DNA from: Salpingoeca rosetta
Lineage: Eukaryota > Protista > Choanoflagellata
Direction of reading: 5' to 3'
Assembly: GCA_033442325.1 (NCBI GenBank)
Contig: JAWQFM010000007.1
Span: 1,640,312 to 1,704,311 of the forward strand
Length of the DNA stretch: 64,000 nucleotides
Part shown: positions 49,638 to 63,047 of the stretch, piece by piece
Numbering within the stretch: position 1 is the stretch's first letter
Layout of the letters: every line of letters begins with the position of its first letter
Made by a program: the position numbers and the translations under genes
The notes under the pieces: generated by a model
The model's database searches: none
What the model saw: only the letters and a program-made list of their open reading frames with translations
Told to the model about the DNA's origin: nothing

Positions 49638-50029
49638 TGTCTGTCTGTCTCTCTGTCTCTCTGTCTCTCTGTCTGTTGGGGGAATGTGCTGGTGCGCCGT
49701 CGCCACTGTCTCATGTTCCATTGCGTACTCTGCCCTCGCTTTGGCCTTTGTATTCGTTGCCTTGCACAACCGCCACTATTCGTGATAATGTCTGCCACGC
49801 CCATGTTGTGCCCGTGAACACCAATTCCTCACCACCCCTGTCGTCTGCCCTATGTTGTGCGGCTGTGCTCATCAGGGCGGGTGCGTTGGCGGCGGCGAAG
49901 GCACGATGCTCGCCGCCAGTGACATCTTCTACCACCTGATTGAGGCACCAGATATCACGTGAGCAACACTACACCCGCCACACACACACACACACATACA
50001 CACATACACACACACACACCACACACCCG

Positions 50030-50064
<35 letters not shown>

Positions 50065-50710
50065 ACCCGCCACACACACACACATACACACACGGACACA
50101 CAGAGAAGCATGCTTTGCTCATAGAAGGAATGAGCAGGCGGTGCCTTGCTATCAAAGACGCACCTGTGAGTATCGCTTGTTGCTTCACGAACTGTGACCA
50201 ATATCGCTTTGCTCTTCATATGTGCGACTGATGTTGCAGGCTGGGTTGCCTCACCAAACCCGGGCTGCAGAACTGGGTGCTTGGTATGCTGCGCGCCCCC
50301 GGAATCGAGGCGACAGGGATGTGGCAGCAGTCATTCAACCCCATCGTTGTGCCTGCAGTCAAGCAAGGCTGCTACATTCAATATCACCGCCTCTTCAAGG
50401 TCAGACACGTACATTCTTTCCTTCACACACTGGTTCAGGTACACGCGACACAACACACACACACACAACACACACACACACACACACACAACACGCAACA
50501 CGCAACACGCAGCACACAGGCGCGCGTGTCGTAATCACCCACGTCCGACCCTCACAGAACGCCCGTGCTTTTGTCACTTCCTGTCTGCGTGAGCAGGGTG
50601 ACAACGCCACCTACCTTGAGTATTGGGCTGCAGATTGGATGCAGGTGTTCAAGCTTGTGCCTGGGCCCGGTCCTCGCCCCATCGTGGCCGGCCCGCCCCC
50701 AGACATCTAG
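47825..50710 (+). CDS. Secreted Asp-box (BNR) beta-propeller protein, probable glycoside hydrolase/sialidase-like fold
   Basis: Signal peptide MVAVVALLAIACFLLCDDAHG; Asp-box STDEGRTW; W/Y-rich blade motifs (VDGAGFYDDETNTWHYI, DEG|TPEIF...FYVTFHGWD, FVDW, FYHLIEAPD); about 8 exons with GT-AG joins; stop TAG at 50708-50710. Confidence 0.7.
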
Positions 50711-50867
50711 CGGCATGCACCCTGCGCTCGCTTCTCCAGTTCACCCATGTACCGTGCTTGTTATCCTGACATGCTGCCTGCTGCTGTTACCTGAGATGAA
50801 CAAACGCTTGTCGTCTGCACAATTTGGACCTCGCAAACTTCTTGTTGGGGGGGGGGGTTGTTTCACA

Positions 50868-50912
<45 letters not shown>

Positions 50913-51266
50913 GCACGCACACACACACACACACACACACATGACTCTTGTTTGGCAAGCTTGTGGTGCTGGGAGCTGATGCGCCTGTGTGTGATCTTGA
51001 CTTTATACGCGTGCCGTGTATGCGCTTGCACATCACGACAGTCAACGGATCAAACGCAAGCCGGCAACTGAGCTTCTCCAAGGCAACGAAGACTACCACG
51101 GCCACAGAGCCAAAAGCAAACAAACCCAACACTCACATCACGACAGCAGGCACTACGGGGGATCAAAGCAGGAACAAGGCGACACATCAACTTGAACACC
51201 AACAACATCTACTACGCTGCGCGTGGCTAAGCGCACGACCATGTCGAGGGAAACCATCGATTACAT

Positions 51267-55479
<4,213 letters not shown>

Positions 55480-55679
55480 GGTTGTCGTCGTGCTATCTGT
55501 CTCTCTCTGCTGAGCTGAGGATGGCGATAGTTGGTGGAAATGGTTGGTGAATTTTCTACAAACAAACCAATGTGGAGGAGTCTTCTGGCTATCAAACGAC
55601 TGAACAACCTGGACTAGCGGTGGGTGAACTGTGTGCGTGTTTCCAGCCAACCCCATCATCCATCCCTCCACCTGTTGAG

Positions 55680-55790
55680 ATGGCTGAAGGCACTGCGGCG
55701 GCGTGGGCGTGGACCAGGGAAGCAAACACACACGATGAAGAAGCTGGCGCGAGTACAAGGGAGCAGGGCCTGGAGGGCTGGGGCACTTAC

Positions 55791-55822
<32 letters not shown>

Positions 55823-56950
55823 CGACGACGAGGACAACGGCAACAAGGGCAACAACGATGGTGCTGATGGTGCTGATGCTGGTGACGAGGAGCACAACCC
55901 GCACCACAGCAACTCAGCACACACATCAGACGCAGCAGATACAGCAGATGCAACAGACACAACAACGGCGACGCAACCATCGCCCCCGCCCCCGCCCCCA
56001 CCCTGCGAGGTGTACATCTCCGTGAACACGGACGAAGGCCTGGCACAAGCGAGTGCGCTCGCGGAGGCGATCGAAGCTCGGGAGGTGAGGTGCGTGATTG
56101 GCGGGCGGAAGGTGCAGCAACACCGACTCAGCTCGACCAAGAGTAAGGATGACCTGCGCGATTCCAAGCTGGCCGTGATCATCGCCACTGCCAACTACGG
56201 CGGTGTGGACACCACGGAGGGCCGGCGCACGCGGCAGGAGCTTGAGTTCATCTTCCGCGAAGACAGGGCGTTCTACCTGATCAAGACGTGCGACCACTTC
56301 AAGGCGCCACGCGTGGACACCTGGCTCACGGATGAGCTCACCCGGTTCCTCTGGACAGCACCGCCGCCCGCGTCGTACAGCGAGCCCGACGCCGCCGTGG
56401 ACGTGCCTGCGGGCCTTGTCGACGATGTGCTCGCGGACATGGCCACAATGATGAAGCCTGGCAGCGATGCGACCGGCGGCGGCGTTGGCAGCGTCTCTGA
56501 CGAGCGGCGGCGGAAGCGGGAGAACGCGGAGCGCATCAAGCAACAGCGGGCACAGCAGCGCTCAAACCACTTCAACGCCGTGCTGAGACGAAGCCGCTGC
56601 ACTGCTGTTGCAAAGAAGCGCATTCAGCAGATCTTCTCCGGCGCCCTCGCCATCGTCGTCGAGTGAGTTGTCCGCTGTGTGTGTGTGTGTGTGTGTGTGC
56701 GTGCGTGCGTGTATGTGTGTGTTTGTGAGTGCTCTTGAGCTTCTGAAACACACCCTTCTACCCTTGTGTCATCCGTCTGGACGCTGGATATCTGGTCTTC
56801 TACCCCTACAGTTTGCACAAGCAGCATCTGGACGACTTTGCGTGCCACGCCCTCGGTATTGCACTCCAGAACAACACAAGCACAAAGGAGATCAGGTGCG
56901 CATGAACAAGTTTGTGTGTGTGTGTGTCTGTCTGTGTCTGTGTGTGTGTG

Positions 56951-56991
<41 letters not shown>

Positions 56992-58202
56992 GCATGTGCG
57001 CGTGCACTGCACTGGCTTTTTGGTGTATTGTGGGAGCGTTTGTGTGTGGATACCTCCAAAGCCTCGCCAACTCGTGGCATGTTTGTGTTTCCAACGCTGT
57101 CATGGCCAGGATGTATTGCAACGACTTCACCCCGAACGGCGTTGAGGCGCTGTGCCGCTCGCTGGAGACCAACCGCGCCCTGACAATGCTCTCGTCAGTC
57201 CATGTTGCGCCCCCGATACCTGTTGCGCAACTGCACATGTTACTTGCTTGTGCATGCTTCGCGCTCAATGCTAATCGCTTCATCCGGACAATATGTGTGT
57301 GTGTGCGTGCGTGCGTGTGTGTGTCTGTGTCTGTTTCTGTGTGTCTGTTTGTGTGTGTGCGTGTGTATATGTGTGCGTGTGTGCGTGCGTGTGTGCGTGT
57401 GTCTGTGTCTGTTTCTGTGTGTCTGTTTGTGTGTGCGCGTGTGTATATGTGTGCGTGCGTGTGTGCGTGTGTCTGTGTCTGTTTCTGTGTCTGTTTGTGT
57501 GTGCGCGTGTGTTGGGGGGGGGTATGTGTGTGTGTACGCGCGTGTGGGTGTGGTGTGGGTGTGTGGGTGTGCAGGTTGGCATCAAACAACGTGGGCAATC
57601 GTGGGGCCGCCGCGTTGGCTAGACTCGTTGAAACGCATCGCCACCTCAAAGAGCTCTGGTTGGATCCGGTGGGCGTGCCCAAATGCATGCCTGCGTGTGC
57701 ATGGCAATATGAACACGTACGCGTGATATGAATGATATGAATCCACTCACAACGTGCGCCTTTCCAACATGTACACCAGGTTGTGGAACACTGCGATTGG
57801 CGATGAAGGCGCGGTGGCGCTGGCCACAGCCTCAACAAAAAGCCGGTCCTTGGAGAAGATCGAGTGAGTCCCTTTGTGTGTGTGTGTGTGTCTGTGTCTG
57901 TGTCTGTGTCTGTGTCTGTGTCTGTGTGTCTGTGTGTGTCTGTGTGTGTGATCATGTGTGTGTGTGCATGTGTGTGCCGTGTGTGTTTGCCTGCCAGCGT
58001 CCCTGCCTTCCAGCCTTCCAGCCAGCCAGCCTCTGATTGCCTGGTGTTGTTGAACCTCGTAACACTCACTACTTCCTCTCCCACCTGACTGGTCGCAATT
58101 CCATCAAGATTGGAAGGCAACCGCCTATCGGCCAAAGGCATCACCAGGGTTGAGGCCGCCGCCAAGCAGAAGATTGGCAAACCCGTCGATGTGAAGCTCT
58201 AG
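55680..58202 (+). CDS. Intracellular TIR-like domain plus ribonuclease-inhibitor/NLRC3-type LRR protein (no NACHT/NB-ARC, no TM segment)
   Basis: Exon 1 (55680-56662) has an acidic tail, TIR-like VYIS...LAVIIATANYG...TRQELEFI...FYLIK and a charged helix. Four 84-nt LRR exons follow (e.g. LASNNVGNRGAAALARLV, LWNTAIGDEGAVALA), then a last exon LEGNRLSAKG...VKL*. Confidence 0.78.
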
Positions 58203-58527
58203 CCCTGCGCACATGTGTGTGTGTGTGTGTTCGTGTGTGCGTTCTCGCGCGCGCGCGTGTGTGTCTGTATGGTTACATGTGTACGCTGTGGGTGCTGTTG
58301 TTTCGCGCGGTGTGTTCGTTCTCTGGATTATGCTGTATTGCTTCAAGACGGTTACTTCTTGATTTACACCACCCACAACAATCACGCCACCCTGTGTGCC
58401 TGAGGCCAACAACGCAAAAGGCAATCTGAGAGAACGGGGTGGCCCAAATGAGCGATTCGATTGACACACGTCACACACGCACACACACATACACACACAC
58501 GCACACGCACACAAAGCGGCGTCGTGC

Positions 58528-59062
58528 CTACGCTGCTGGCTCCTGTGCAACACGCACGACAGCAATCCCAACCGCAGGAAGAACTGTGTCACCATTGATG
58601 ACTGATGCAGCGTCGGCTAAGGACAGCTCTTGCGTAATGTTGGCATGCACCGTGCCTTCCGCGCCCTGCTCAAAGCAAGTGAAGGATCCCATGTTGCGTG
58701 AGATGTGCATGTGCGCTGCGTGTCTATGTGTCTGAGTGTGGGTGGGTGTGCCTGTGTATCTATATGTCTGAGTGTGGGTGGGCGTGCGTAGCATGTATCT
58801 CTGTGTCTGTGGTCGCCTGTGCTGGAGCTGGATGGTTACAGTACGTGCTTTCATGCCCATGCCTTCGGTGTGAGAGCCGCAACAACACGGTGCCATCTGG
58901 GCCTCACCAGTTTCAGCGCGTCGCGGAGCACGTGAAGTATCCTCCCCTGCATACTCGCGCCAGACACCACAGCCACCGCATTCACGTGCGCTATTGCTAC
59001 AGATTTCGCAAACAGCGCAGCTTGCAGCGTAGCCCCAACCTGACACGCACAAATGTTGGCCA

Positions 59063-59098
<36 letters not shown>

Positions 59099-59120
59099 CG
59101 TGGCTGCGTGTTGTGCGCAT

Positions 59121-59184
<64 letters not shown>

Positions 59185-60608
59185 GTGTGTGTGTGTGCGT
59201 GTGTGTGTGTGTGTATGCGGACAAGTCTGTTTGTGCGCGGAACGTAGTGTGTGTGTGTGTGTGCGGCTTCACGCTGTCTAGGGAGTTCATCAAATCTATG
59301 TGCTCGAGATTGAGATTGAGTTCTGAATACTCGCAAGAGTCAGCTAATAACCTTTGACGGGTTGTGTTTATGTGTCTTCTAAATGGCTGTATGTAGTAAG
59401 TATTGTCCAGGCTCACGTATCGTAGTAGTCACCAGCGTGGGTGTCCCACTGCCGCCACTCACCTTAACAGGAACATCAGGGGTTTTTTTTCNNNNNNNNN
59501 NNNNNNNNNNNNNNNNNNNNNNNNNNNNNNNNNNNNNNNNNNNNNNNNNNNNNNNNNNNNNNNNNNNNNNNNNNNNNNNNNNNNNNNNNNNNNNNNNNNN
59601 NNNNNNNNNNNNNNNNNNNNNNNNNNNNNNNNNNNNNNNNNNNNNNNNNNNNNNNNNNNNNNNNNNNNNNNNNNNNNNNNNNNNNNNNNNNNNNNNNNNN
59701 NNNNNNNNNNNNNNNNNNNNNNNNNNNNNNNNNNNNNNNNNNNNNNNNNNNNNNNNNNNNNNNNNNNNNNNNNNNNNNNNNNNNNNNNNNNNNNNNNNNN
59801 NNNNNNNNNNNNNNNNNNNNNNNNNNNNNNNNNNNNNNNNNNNNNNNNNNNNNNNNNNNNNNNNNNNNNNNNNNNNNNNNNNNNNNNNNNNNNNNNNNNN
59901 NNNNNNNNNNNNNNNNNNNNNNNNNNNNNNNNNNNNNNNNNNNNNNNNNNNNNNNNNNNNNNNNNNNNNNNNNNNNNNNNNNNNNNNNNNNNNNNNNNNN
60001 NNNNNNNNNNNNNNNNNNNNNNNNNNNNNNNNNNNNNNNNNNNNNNNNNNNNNNNNNNNNNNNNNNNNNNNNNNNNNNNNNNNNNNNNNNNNNNNNNNNN
60101 NNNNNNNNNNNNNNNNNNNNNNNNNNNNNNNNNNNNNNNNNNNNNNNNNNNNNNNNNNNNNNNNNNNNNNNNNNNNNNNNNNNNNNNNNNNNNNNNNNNN
60201 NNNNNNNNNNNNNNNNNNNNNNNNNNNNNNNNNNNNNNNNNNNNNNNNNNNNNNNNNNNNNNNNNNNNNNNNNNNNNNNNNNNNNNNNNNNNNNNNNNNN
60301 NNNNNNNNNNNNNNNNNNNNNNNNNNNNNNNNNNNNNNNNNNNNNNNNNNNNNNNNNNNNNNNNNNNNNNNNNNNNNNNNNNNNNNNNNNNNNNNNNNNN
60401 NNNNNNNNNNNNNNNNNNNNCCCAAGGCTAGCAGCATCAGTGGTGTTCATGACTTTGCGCTGCTCCATGCCACCATGCTGCCAGTCTCATGTCAACATCA
60501 CATCCACGCTTCCCCACGGCCTGCGCACCCCCAAAAAGGCATGCAGGAGTACATTGAGGCAATCACCTTCATGGCATACATCAAGGATGGGTCGCTGCCA
60601 TCACCAGA

Positions 60609-60711: not shown

Positions 60712-60843
60712 AATCACCTGGTCATCTTGTGGATCAAAGACCGCTGTGTAAACTTGAACAAGGACGTGAGCCTCCGGCACAGGTGGCCACAAGTTGTCTG
60801 CCACGACTGCCTTACCACCCTCGTCCACAACAACAACCTTCAT
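58528..60843 (-). CDS. CRYZL1-like (quinone oxidoreductase-like 1, MDR fold); middle exons fall in the assembly gap
   Basis: First exon [10 protein letters not shown]...[17 protein letters not shown]|gtgatt. 3' exons [13 protein letters not shown]...[14 protein letters not shown]|[19 protein letters not shown] resemble CRYZL1 LFLKGATLAFLN...QGKYLCILKDVMEKLSTG. Confidence 0.65.
59492..60420. other. Assembly gap (Ns)
   Basis: Run of N. Confidence 1.
60539..60612 (+). other. Isolated exon fragment of translin-associated factor X (TRAX/TSNAX)
   Basis: aaag|[20 protein letters not shown] resembles TRAX GLQEYVEAVSF..FIKTRSL. It runs straight into (CA)n with no GT donor. Confidence 0.6.
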
Positions 60844-60961
60844 CGCTCAGTCGGCCAGCGCAGTGCAAGTCGTGAAGATTGGCCATGTCGCTCATAGCTT
60901 TCGGCATCCGCTCAACAACCAACCAACCAACCAACCAACCCTCTCTGCCCTTCGACCACAC

Positions 60962-62302
60962 ATGAACGTGAAGAGGTCCAGTCTGTCGCGTGTGCAGCGA
61001 GCGGCTGCATTACTGGTTGTGGCCACACTGGTGCTAGGAATACTGCTGTGGTCATCCCTCACTTCAGTACCCACTGCTAGGAAGGGCAATGGCGTCGCCG
61101 AGACTTCGCGACTGTCACGGGACATGGTGGTGCAAAGACTGTGGTTGAACTTTGGCGCTGCATATCACAACGCCACAGCTGTGGCTGCACAAGGTAGCAG
61201 CGACTCCAGCCACAACGGGTTCATTGTGGTGGAACACGCAAGCCAGCATGTGCCTGAGGATGTGGTGCGCGCAGCTTCTCGACGATGGAAGGCGTTCATG
61301 CGGCTCGCGCCAACGTTTGAGCAGCACACCCAGGCGTTTACTCGCGACCGCGCGATCGTCATCAGTGGTGGCGGGTACCAGCTCGAGTTCGTGTTCGCCA
61401 GCGTCCGCCTGCTTCGCCTATACGGGTGCACCCTCCCGATTGAGTTGTGGGTGAGCAGTGTTCGCGGTGAAGTGCCCTCCGTTACCCAGCGCCGTGCACT
61501 GGAACAAATTGGGGTGGAGGTGATGGATTTGGACGCATACGCCGGCGTGTTTCCAGAGTTGGCGGAGCAGATGCACCCTTCAAAGCCGAGCACCAAGCCA
61601 TACATTCTCAAGCAGCTAGCGCTTGTCTCCTCAAACTGCCGCCAGTGTTTGCTGCTCGACGCTGACAACGCAGCTGTGCGCGACCCAACCTACCTCTTTT
61701 CCGACGAGAACTTTGTGCGCACGGGCCATCTTCTCTGGCCAGACTTTTGGCACATGCGCACTGGCCCGGCGTCCATCCGCGCCATATTTGGGCTGAACGA
61801 CGACTGGGCCAGCACGAGCCCATGGGACGTCAGGACGGTGGAATCAGGGCAGATGGTCGTCGACAAGGCCCGTGCTTGGCGCACACTCATGCTGTCCGTT
61901 TACATGCAGCTGCAAACCGAGTTCTTCGACAACCAAGTGCGTGAACTGAGGTGTGGAGGGGCAGGAGGTGTGTGTGTGCGTGTATGTTTGCGTTGTGTAT
62001 GTGGGTGTTCATGCTCGACTGTGCGTGTGGGTGTTCATGCTCGACTGTGCGTGTGTGTGTGTGTGTGTTTGCAATGCGAACTTTGAGTCACGCGCTCACA
62101 CTCCCAGTTGTACGCTTTGGTCCATCGTGCCATGCCATGAATGTGTAGATGAGAGCTCTACATCATTTAGGTGGCGGCGGTGACAAGCAAACGTTTCTGA
62201 TTGGATGCCTTGCCACCAACTCATCGTGTCACATTATTGACCACCCAGTCGCTTCGGCTGCACGAATTATTGATGGCACTTTCTGCGGCCGCGCCATGGT
62301 GC

Positions 62303-62700: not shown

Positions 62701-62947
<247 letters not shown>

Positions 62948-63047
62948 NNNNNNNNNNNNNNNNNNNNNNNNNNNNNNNNNNNNNNNNNNNNNNNNNNNNN
63001 NNNNNNNNNNNNNNNNNNNNNNNNNNNNNNNNNNNNNNNNNNNNNNN
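62948..63047. other. Assembly gap (100 Ns)
   Basis: Run of N. Confidence 1.

What the first reader, a model, noticed from the sequence alone, without database searches (positions are those of the whole stretch)
55680..58202. Cytosolic TIR-LRR protein without a nucleotide-binding domain: candidate minimal innate immune receptor/enzyme
Seen: no signal peptide or TM segment; a TIR-like block at about 56005-56355 (beta-A VYIS, beta-C LAVIIATANY, alpha-C TRQELEF); a basic helical linker; and about 5 RI-type LRRs. There is no P-loop or NACHT between them. Knowledge: the alpha-C glutamate is catalytic in NAD+-cleaving TIRs (SARM1, plant TNLs, bacterial Thoeris); TLRs have extracellular LRRs, a TM and TIR, while NLRs have effector-NBD-LRR. 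Inference: a third architecture coupling an NLR-style LRR directly to a possibly enzymatic TIR in an animal relative. The TIR call rests on motif pattern only.
Basis: partly seen in the sequence, partly recalled or inferred. Interest (0 to 1): 0.72.

Follow-up and report, generated by a model that had tools for sequence, protein, structure and literature searches.

The report
Soluble TIR-LRR gene in a choanoflagellate
This is an intact six-exon gene of the choanoflagellate Salpingoeca rosetta for a soluble protein that joins a very divergent TIR domain directly to five leucine-rich repeats; the fold call holds, but it is an odd offshoot of a large known-type TIR family and is probably not a strong NAD-cleaving enzyme.

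Summary
Positions 55680-58202 (+) hold a six-exon, all GT-AG gene model of 470 aa: an acidic tail, a TIR domain, a basic helix and five 28-residue RI-type LRRs. Four of the LRRs are single 84-base exons. There is no membrane segment and no P-loop.

The TIR call is now tested. An AlphaFold model built with paralogues (pLDDT 84.5) matches only TIR domains (Z 11-13.7). Family profiles hit Roq1, RPV1 and SARM1.

The domain belongs to a large TIR_2/DUF4062-like subfamily. It has at least 24 other copies in this genome and 1145 representative clusters worldwide. Its members are fused directly to ARM, WD40, MORN, PDZ, SH2 or LRR-Roc-COR. So TIR plus repeats without an NTPase is the family's habit, not a unique third architecture.

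This copy is the most divergent one. It keeps the catalytic-position Glu (E187) but has lost the SFRG-type Arg, the BB-loop Gly and 25 of 47 conserved positions.

No annotated protein holding exon 1 was found. The scan had already noted TIR-LRR-Roco relatives elsewhere in this genome, but not this gene.

The parts
55680..56662 (+). Exon 1 (aa 1-327 plus two bases of the next codon). It holds the acidic low-complexity tail (aa 1-108), the TIR domain, the linker and the start of LRR1.
   Evidence: First in-frame ATG; donor GA|gtgagt; GC3 0.73 in this frame.
56004..56462 (+). TIR domain (aa 109-261), with elements bA-aA-bB-aB-bC-aC-bD-aD-bE-aE.
   Evidence: AF2 with the paralogue alignment gives pLDDT 84.5 and pTM 0.82. 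Foldseek's 27 best matches are all TIR domains (E from 3e-5) and TIR domains fill most of the top 50, with a few other Rossmann-like folds further down. The 50 best VIA-align entries are all TIR, Z 10.9-13.7. The best ESM Atlas hits are TIR_2 clusters, 0.96. Pfam on this copy alone is sub-threshold: TIR_2 E 0.063, DUF4062 E 0.053.
56238..56240 (+). GAG codon for E187, the residue at the catalytic-Glu position of NADase TIRs.
   Evidence: The family E-L pair aligns with 'EEL' of Roq1 and 'DEL' of RPV1 in the profile-to-PDB alignment. It is at least 90% conserved in the family.
56490..56633 (+). Basic helical linker (RRRKRENAERIKQQRAQQR...KKRIQQIF).
   Evidence: One long helix in the single-sequence AF2 model, with pLDDT 79-92 over aa 271-300. 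No Pfam match.
56812..56895 (+). Exon 2, 84 nt, RI-type LRR cassette.
   Evidence: cag|...|gtgcgc, phase 2; repeat register.
57110..57193 (+). Exon 3, 84 nt, RI-type LRR cassette.
   Evidence: LRR_6 E 0.16.
57575..57658 (+). Exon 4, 84 nt, RI-type LRR cassette.
   Evidence: LRR_6 E 0.048; single copy in the genome at DNA level.
57780..57863 (+). Exon 5, 84 nt, RI-type LRR cassette.
   Evidence: LRR_6 E 0.0043.
58109..58202 (+). Exon 6: last LRR, C-terminal tail and TAG stop (58200-58202).
   Evidence: Acceptor aag|, in-frame stop.

Best explanation
The locus is a real, intact Salpingoeca rosetta gene for a soluble 470-aa protein. Its parts, in order, are an acidic disordered tail, a TIR domain, a basic helix and a short five-repeat RI-type LRR arc. 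The TIR belongs to a large TIR_2/DUF4062-like subfamily whose members put the TIR at the N-terminus of repeat scaffolds. The LRR cassettes have the same 84-base exon design as those of the TIR-LRR-Roc-COR paralogues, so the gene looks like such a receptor without its GTPase half (inferred). The TIR is the fastest-evolved copy and has lost several positions that the family, and NADase TIRs, conserve. I therefore think it most likely acts as a TIR adaptor or regulator. In that reading the LRR binds a partner or ligand and the TIR joins, nucleates or caps assemblies of other TIR proteins, with weak or no NAD+ cleavage of its own. The gene structure, fold, family membership and divergence are shown. 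The adaptor/regulator role is inferred.
For: Gene model and coding signal. Locus bounds: the AP-3 mu gene lies head-to-head, with a putative start codon at 55479 (-), read by eye and 200 bp from this ATG, and a Mannosyl_trans3 gene lies downstream from 60794. There is no Roc match near the window, while Roc lies 3-10 kb downstream of seven paralogues. TIR fold. Family: 24 other genomic copies at E<1e-3; 19 of 22 match TIR_2; profiles hit Roq1, RPV1, RUN1 and SARM1; 1145 representative clusters with ARM, WD40, MORN, PDZ, SH2 and Roc-COR partners. Same LRR exon design as the Roco paralogues. Divergence: 22 of 47 conserved positions kept against 64-100% in the other copies; end branch 4.29 against a median of 0.45; R11->N, G43->H with an insertion of low pLDDT, F77/S78->R/R. 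An ORF that stays open across six exons despite this divergence argues for selection.
Against: No annotated or assembled protein holding exon 1 was found at 180-572 aa or 571-1816 aa, although the S. rosetta proteome is in that collection. The Glu at the catalytic position is kept, so catalysis is not excluded. A TIR homodimer prediction gave no answer. No orthologue was found, so conservation of the architecture cannot be judged.
Confidence: 0.5

Rival explanations
1. One reading: a minimal NTPase-free immune sensor-enzyme. A ligand bound by the LRR clusters or releases the TIR, which then cleaves NAD+ or makes a cADPR-type signal through E187.
For: E187 aligns with the catalytic Glu of Roq1 and RPV1. 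The closest folds are NADase TIRs: SARM1, RUN1, RPV1 and AbTir. Another S. rosetta TIR (F2UB80) makes cADPR in a Glu-dependent way (preprint 10.64898/2026.04.20.719644).
Against: The tested S. rosetta TIR is a different, C-terminal TIR. This copy lacks the Arg of the S-x-R motif, the BB-loop Gly (loop modelled at pLDDT below 50) and the aromatic or Trp position before the Glu. It has no oligomerising NTPase, and the self-association prediction gave no answer.
Confidence: 0.2
2. A decaying or silent remnant: a truncated copy of a TIR-LRR-Roc-COR gene that no longer does anything.
For: It is the most divergent copy. It has no Roc-COR. It is absent from the annotated proteome at the lengths searched. 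No orthologue was found.
Against: All six exons stay in frame with GT-AG borders and no stop. GC3 is 0.74-0.84 against about 0.52 in the introns. Divergence of about 4 changes per site under no selection would have broken a 470-codon frame. Several runs hold about 0.5-0.6 of the sampled words, about the share that exons plus UTRs make up, but their library type is only guessed.
Confidence: 0.12
3. An incomplete model: further exons, hidden in the 0.9-kb assembly gap at about 59490-60400 or reached by skipping exon 6, add an NTPase or another domain.
For: There is an assembly gap 1.3 kb downstream. The LRR-bearing paralogues continue into Roc-COR. No RNA check was possible.
Against: Exon 6 ends in an in-frame stop after a C-terminal tail. 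No Roc match lies on this part of contig C7. No Walker A occurs in any frame up to 59480. The gap is too short for Roc-COR, which takes roughly 400 aa or more in P0007. The next gene has its own N-terminal hydrophobic start.
Confidence: 0.1

Closest known systems
S. rosetta TIR-LRR-Roc-COR proteins (e.g. PTSG_12838, XP_004989891.1 = P0007)
   Same: The same TIR subfamily at the N-terminus, and RI-type LRRs built from 84-base exons in the same phase and register.
   Different: They carry Roc and COR-A after the LRRs and a helical region after the TIR. The window gene stops after five LRRs, has a basic helix instead, and its TIR is far more divergent.
S. rosetta TIR-ARM proteins (e.g. PTSG_10764, named a DUF4062 domain-containing protein; PTSG_08034) and the TIR-WD40 and TIR-MORN proteins of the same subfamily
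   Same: An N-terminal TIR joined directly to a repeat scaffold with no NTPase and no membrane segment.
   Different: The repeat type differs (ARM, WD40 or MORN instead of LRR), and their TIRs keep the family consensus.
Plant TIR-NB-LRR receptors (Roq1, RPV1, RUN1) and SARM1
   Same: The best sequence-profile and fold matches, with a Glu at the catalytic position.
   Different: They have an NB-ARC (plants) or ARM-SAM (SARM1) oligomerising part and keep the W-x-x-x-E and S-F-R-G type motifs, which this copy lacks. Plant LRRs are not RI-type (own knowledge).
Toll-like receptors, including choanoflagellate TLRs and 'Kinase TLRs' (Richter et al. 2018, PMC6040629)
   Same: LRR and TIR in one protein.
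   Different: TLRs run signal peptide, extracellular LRR, TM, then cytosolic TIR. Here the order is reversed and there is no signal peptide or TM.

Membership tests
TIR domain superfamily (Pfam clan STIR: TIR, TIR_2, DUF4062) | Flavodoxin-like fold with five parallel strands alternating with helices aA-aE. | tested here: met
   The AF2 model (pLDDT 84.5) has the bA-aA-bB-aB-bC-aC-bD-aD-bE-aE order. The 50 best VIA-align entries are all TIR, Z 10.9-13.7 over 113-140 residues. Foldseek E from 3e-5.
TIR domain superfamily (Pfam clan STIR: TIR, TIR_2, DUF4062) | Significant sequence-profile match to TIR models. | tested here: inconclusive
   This copy alone scores TIR_2 at 14.2 bits (cut-off 28) and DUF4062 at 14.2 bits (cut-off 24.7). 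Through its family, 19 of 22 paralogues match TIR_2 (best 4e-7), 35 of 81 representatives match at <=1e-4, and the family profile hits Roq1 at 3e-5.
NAD+-cleaving (enzymatic) TIR domains | Catalytic Glu on helix aC. | tested here: met
   E187 with L188 aligns with 'EEL' of Roq1 and 'DEL' of RPV1.
NAD+-cleaving (enzymatic) TIR domains | Supporting active-site and assembly residues: the Arg of the S-F-R-G type motif, the BB-loop Gly and the Trp/aromatic residue four to five residues before the Glu. Their roles are from my own knowledge of RUN1 and SARM1 studies. | tested here: not met
   The family keeps R11 and G43 (at least 90%) and F77. The window copy has N, H (with an insertion, pLDDT below 50) and R at these positions.
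NAD+-cleaving (enzymatic) TIR domains | Measured NADase or cyclase activity. | not testable with these tools
   Needs a biochemical assay.
RI-type (ribonuclease-inhibitor-like) LRR, Pfam LRR_6 | Tandem 28-29-residue repeats of the form LxxLxLxxNxIGxxGAxxLaxaL. | tested here: met
   Five repeats of 28 residues are in register. The 84-base exon cassette design is the same as in the LRR_6-positive paralogue P0007.
RI-type (ribonuclease-inhibitor-like) LRR, Pfam LRR_6 | Pfam LRR_6 over its cut-off. | tested here: inconclusive
Each exon cuts a repeat in two. Per-exon E values are 0.0043, 0.048 and 0.16, with scores of 12.5-17.4 bits against a cut-off of 23.4.
NLR / STAND receptors | A NACHT or NB-ARC NTPase with a Walker A motif between effector and repeats. 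| tested here: not met
   No G-x4-GK[ST] in the model or in six frames of 50000-59480. No NTPase Pfam hit on exon 1.
ROCO proteins | A Roc GTPase plus COR domain. | tested here: not met
   The genome-wide Roc scan finds none near C7:1.696 Mb, while seven TIR paralogues have one 3-10 kb downstream.
Toll-like receptors | Signal peptide, extracellular LRR, TM helix and C-terminal TIR. | tested here: not met
   The maximum 19-residue hydropathy is 1.02, and the TIR lies N-terminal to the LRR.

The most novel reading that the evidence does not exclude
An NTPase-free, soluble LRR-gated TIR enzyme in the sister group of animals. Ligand binding to the five-repeat LRR clusters the protein, perhaps through the basic helix, and E187 then cleaves NAD+ or makes a cADPR-type signal. 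This would be a minimal cytosolic sensor-effector simpler than TLRs, NLRs or Roco receptors.
Probability: 0.13. Interest if true: 0.75.

Novelty: new variant of a known kind. Interest (0 to 1): 0.4.

Why it matters
Choanoflagellates are the closest relatives of animals, so their TIR proteins bear on how innate-immune signalling was assembled. This gene shows that an RI-type LRR arc can sit directly on a TIR with no NTPase or membrane anchor. It belongs to a large family (1145 representative clusters) in which TIR is routinely fused to bare repeat scaffolds. That family, more than this divergent copy, is the natural place to test whether repeat-gated TIR enzymes work without a STAND or Roc switch. 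The gene also appears to be missing from the public S. rosetta protein set at the lengths searched.

Tried and rejected
- **Read laying:** There is therefore no read-level evidence on splicing.
- **Single-sequence AF2:** mean pLDDT 46.9. It was usable only for the linker helix.
- **Pfam on this copy:** the whole exon-1 ORF gave nothing, and the TIR segment gave only sub-threshold hits.
- **Word searches:** exon 1 found nothing. A two-row alignment designed to reach proteins of 571-1816 aa found no protein holding exon 1.
- **Metagenome scan:** no relative.
- **BLASTP of the linker against the post-TIR region of paralogue L017:** no similarity.
- **Tree:** the window copy sits on a 4.29 branch and its pairing with L023 is long-branch attraction. 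Descent from the Roco clade could not be shown.
- **Complex prediction, TIR x2:** no answer. This counts neither for nor against binding.
- **Pfam on short AP-3 mu N-terminal exon pieces:** one call ended in an error and the other gave nothing. A PDB phmmer search settled the identity of one piece.
- **Paper searches for 'TIR-LRR' and for S. rosetta + TIR + Roco:** nothing useful.
- **NLR, TLR or ROCO membership:** rejected (see Membership tests).

Full report
**Gene model.** The stretch reads as one gene on the + strand with six exons: 55680-56662, 56812-56895, 57110-57193, 57575-57658, 57780-57863 and 58109-58202. Every intron is GT-AG. The CDS is 1413 nt and ends in TAG at 58200-58202, giving 470 aa. 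Exons 2-5 are each 84 nt in phase 2 and each carries one 28-residue repeat. Third-position GC is 0.74 in the CDS (0.84 in the TIR part), against 0.51-0.54 GC in the five introns and both flanks. The joined protein was built only inside scripts, for translation, hydropathy and motif checks.

**Absence of TM and NTPase.** The highest 19-residue hydropathy mean is 1.02, so there is no signal peptide or TM helix. There is no Walker A motif in the model or in any frame of 50000-59480.

**Locus bounds.** The upstream neighbour lies on the opposite strand.
- Its C-terminal exon matches Adap_comp_sub.
- A piece at 54378-54509 (-) matches residues 74-112 of AP-3 mu-1 (E 7e-5).
- Its likely start codon, read by eye ('[13 protein letters not shown]'), is at 55479 (-), 200 bp from this gene's ATG.

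Downstream there is no coding-like ORF before an assembly gap at about 59490-60400. A Mannosyl_trans3 gene then begins at about 60794. So there is no room upstream, and little downstream, for hidden NTPase or TM exons.

**TIR fold.** On its own this copy gives only sub-threshold Pfam hits (TIR_2 E 0.063, DUF4062 E 0.053) and a poor single-sequence model. The evidence beyond that is as follows.
- The ESM Atlas feature search puts TIR_2 clusters first, at 0.96.
- The genome holds 24 other places that match the domain at E<1e-3.
- With an alignment of 21 paralogues (A1), AlphaFold gives pLDDT 84.5 and pTM 0.82, with the bA-aA-bB-aB-bC-aC-bD-aD-bE-aE order.
- Foldseek's 27 best PDB matches are all TIR domains (Roq1, TIR-1/SARM1, PdTIR, RUN1, RPS4/RRS1, L6; E from 3e-5). 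TIR domains also fill most of the top 50, with a few other Rossmann-like folds lower down.
- All 50 best VIA-align entries are TIR domains, Z 10.9-13.7.
- Nineteen of 22 family members match TIR_2 and 18 match DUF4062.
- The family profile hits Roq1, RPV1, RUN1 and SARM1.

**Family context.** A profile search of 1.84 billion representative proteins finds 1145 clusters at E<=1e-3 and 217 at E<=1e-30. Many of the top hits are annotated S. rosetta proteins: PTSG_12838, 10764, 09915, 02597, 02868, 03080, 06287 and 06434. This also confirms the organism. Others come from metagenomes and other assemblies, and P0001 is at most 55% identical to any S. rosetta copy.

The partners of the TIR are ARM (LRRK2-type), WD40, MORN, PDZ, SH2, Smr and RRM+MLLE, and, in one subgroup, LRR-Roc-COR.
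- Five paralogues have RI-type LRR exons after the TIR exon.
- Seven have a Roc match 3-10 kb downstream on the same strand, whereas nothing of the kind lies near the window.
- Their LRR exons share the window gene's design exactly: cag|N + 27 codons + NN|gt, in the same repeat register.

The window gene thus looks like the front half of a TIR-LRR-Roc-COR gene. The tree cannot show that descent, because the window TIR sits on a branch of 4.29 changes per site against a median of 0.45.

**Catalytic competence.** A deeper profile (126 sequences) aligns the family's E-L pair (E187-L188 here; codon 56238-56240) with 'EEL' of Roq1 and 'DEL' of RPV1. From my own knowledge of those proteins, that is the catalytic-Glu position.

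The family also keeps the Arg that aligns with the Arg of plant 'SFRG', a BB-loop Gly, and an aromatic residue just before the position of the Trp in W-x-x-x-E. The window copy has Asn, His (inside an insertion modelled at pLDDT below 50) and Arg-Arg at these places. Overall it keeps 22 of 47 positions that at least 80% of the paralogues share. The other copies keep 64-100%.

A frame that stays open across six exons despite such divergence argues for selection, but for a changed role.

**LRR part.** The five repeats fit the RI-type pattern. Three exons give weak LRR_6 hits, and each exon splits a repeat, which lowers the scores. Exon 4 has no near copy elsewhere in the genome.

**Expression and annotation.** Local scripts did read the whole window file for six-frame motif scans and composition.

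In the run search, several runs of guessed type hold 0.51-0.59 of the sampled words, and others hold 0.88-0.89. About 0.5-0.6 is the share that exons plus UTRs make up. This hints at mature mRNA but is not evidence.

No protein holding exon 1 was found at 180-572 aa or 571-1816 aa, although the annotated S. rosetta proteome is in that collection. The gene seems to be unannotated or modelled very differently.

**Mechanism.** I commit to a TIR adaptor/regulator role at about 0.5. The short LRR arc binds a partner or ligand, and the TIR joins or modulates assemblies of other TIR proteins of this expanded family, with little catalysis of its own. The rivals are:
- an LRR-gated NADase (0.2);
- a silent remnant (0.12);
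- an incomplete model (0.1).

A preprint (10.64898/2026.04.20.719644) shows Glu-dependent cADPR production by another S. rosetta TIR, F2UB80. That is a C-terminal TIR of a different type, so it shows only that enzymatic TIRs exist in this organism.

**Novelty.** Richter et al. 2018 (PMC6040629) listed cytosolic choanoflagellate TIR proteins with Ank, Arm and SH2 partners, and TLR-like types. I found no description of a soluble TIR-LRR(RI) protein without an NTPase. It is a new variant within a known kind, not a new category. Earlier notes of this scan describe TIR-LRR-Roco relatives on other pieces of the genome. I verified that link independently.

Noticed in passing
window 51270-55479 (-): An AP-3 complex mu-subunit gene lies head-to-head with the TIR-LRR gene. 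Its likely start codon (55479, read by eye) is only 200 bp from the TIR-LRR ATG, which suggests a shared bidirectional promoter region.
   Followed up: partly
L020:3941-7849 (+) = G000:C17 about 622.2-626.1 kb: One 1303-aa open frame joins the same family's N-terminal TIR to four RRM and five MLLE domains, a poly(A)-binding-protein-like body with a TIR on it.
   Followed up: no
L010:190-1983 (-) = G000:C17 about 81.5-83.3 kb: This paralogue has the TIR (its first strand and helix are missing from this open frame) followed by a PDZ domain.
   Followed up: no
P0009, P0012, P0048 (S. rosetta PTSG_03080, PTSG_06287, PTSG_06434): Annotated S. rosetta proteins of the same TIR subfamily are named by UniProt for SH2, 'SecA family profile' and Smr domains. 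The TIR module is highly promiscuous in its partners.
   Followed up: no
window 60794-62086 (+): A putative mannosyltransferase gene (Pfam Mannosyl_trans3, E 2.9e-25) with an N-terminal hydrophobic anchor is the next gene downstream.
   Followed up: partly
window about 59490-60400 and about 62900-63000: Runs of N (assembly gaps). The first lies 1.3 kb after the stop codon of the TIR-LRR gene.
   Followed up: no
window 56490-56520 (+), aa 271-280: 'ERRRKRE' at the start of the basic helix looks like a classical nuclear localisation signal. The N-terminus carries a run of 13 Asp.
   Followed up: no
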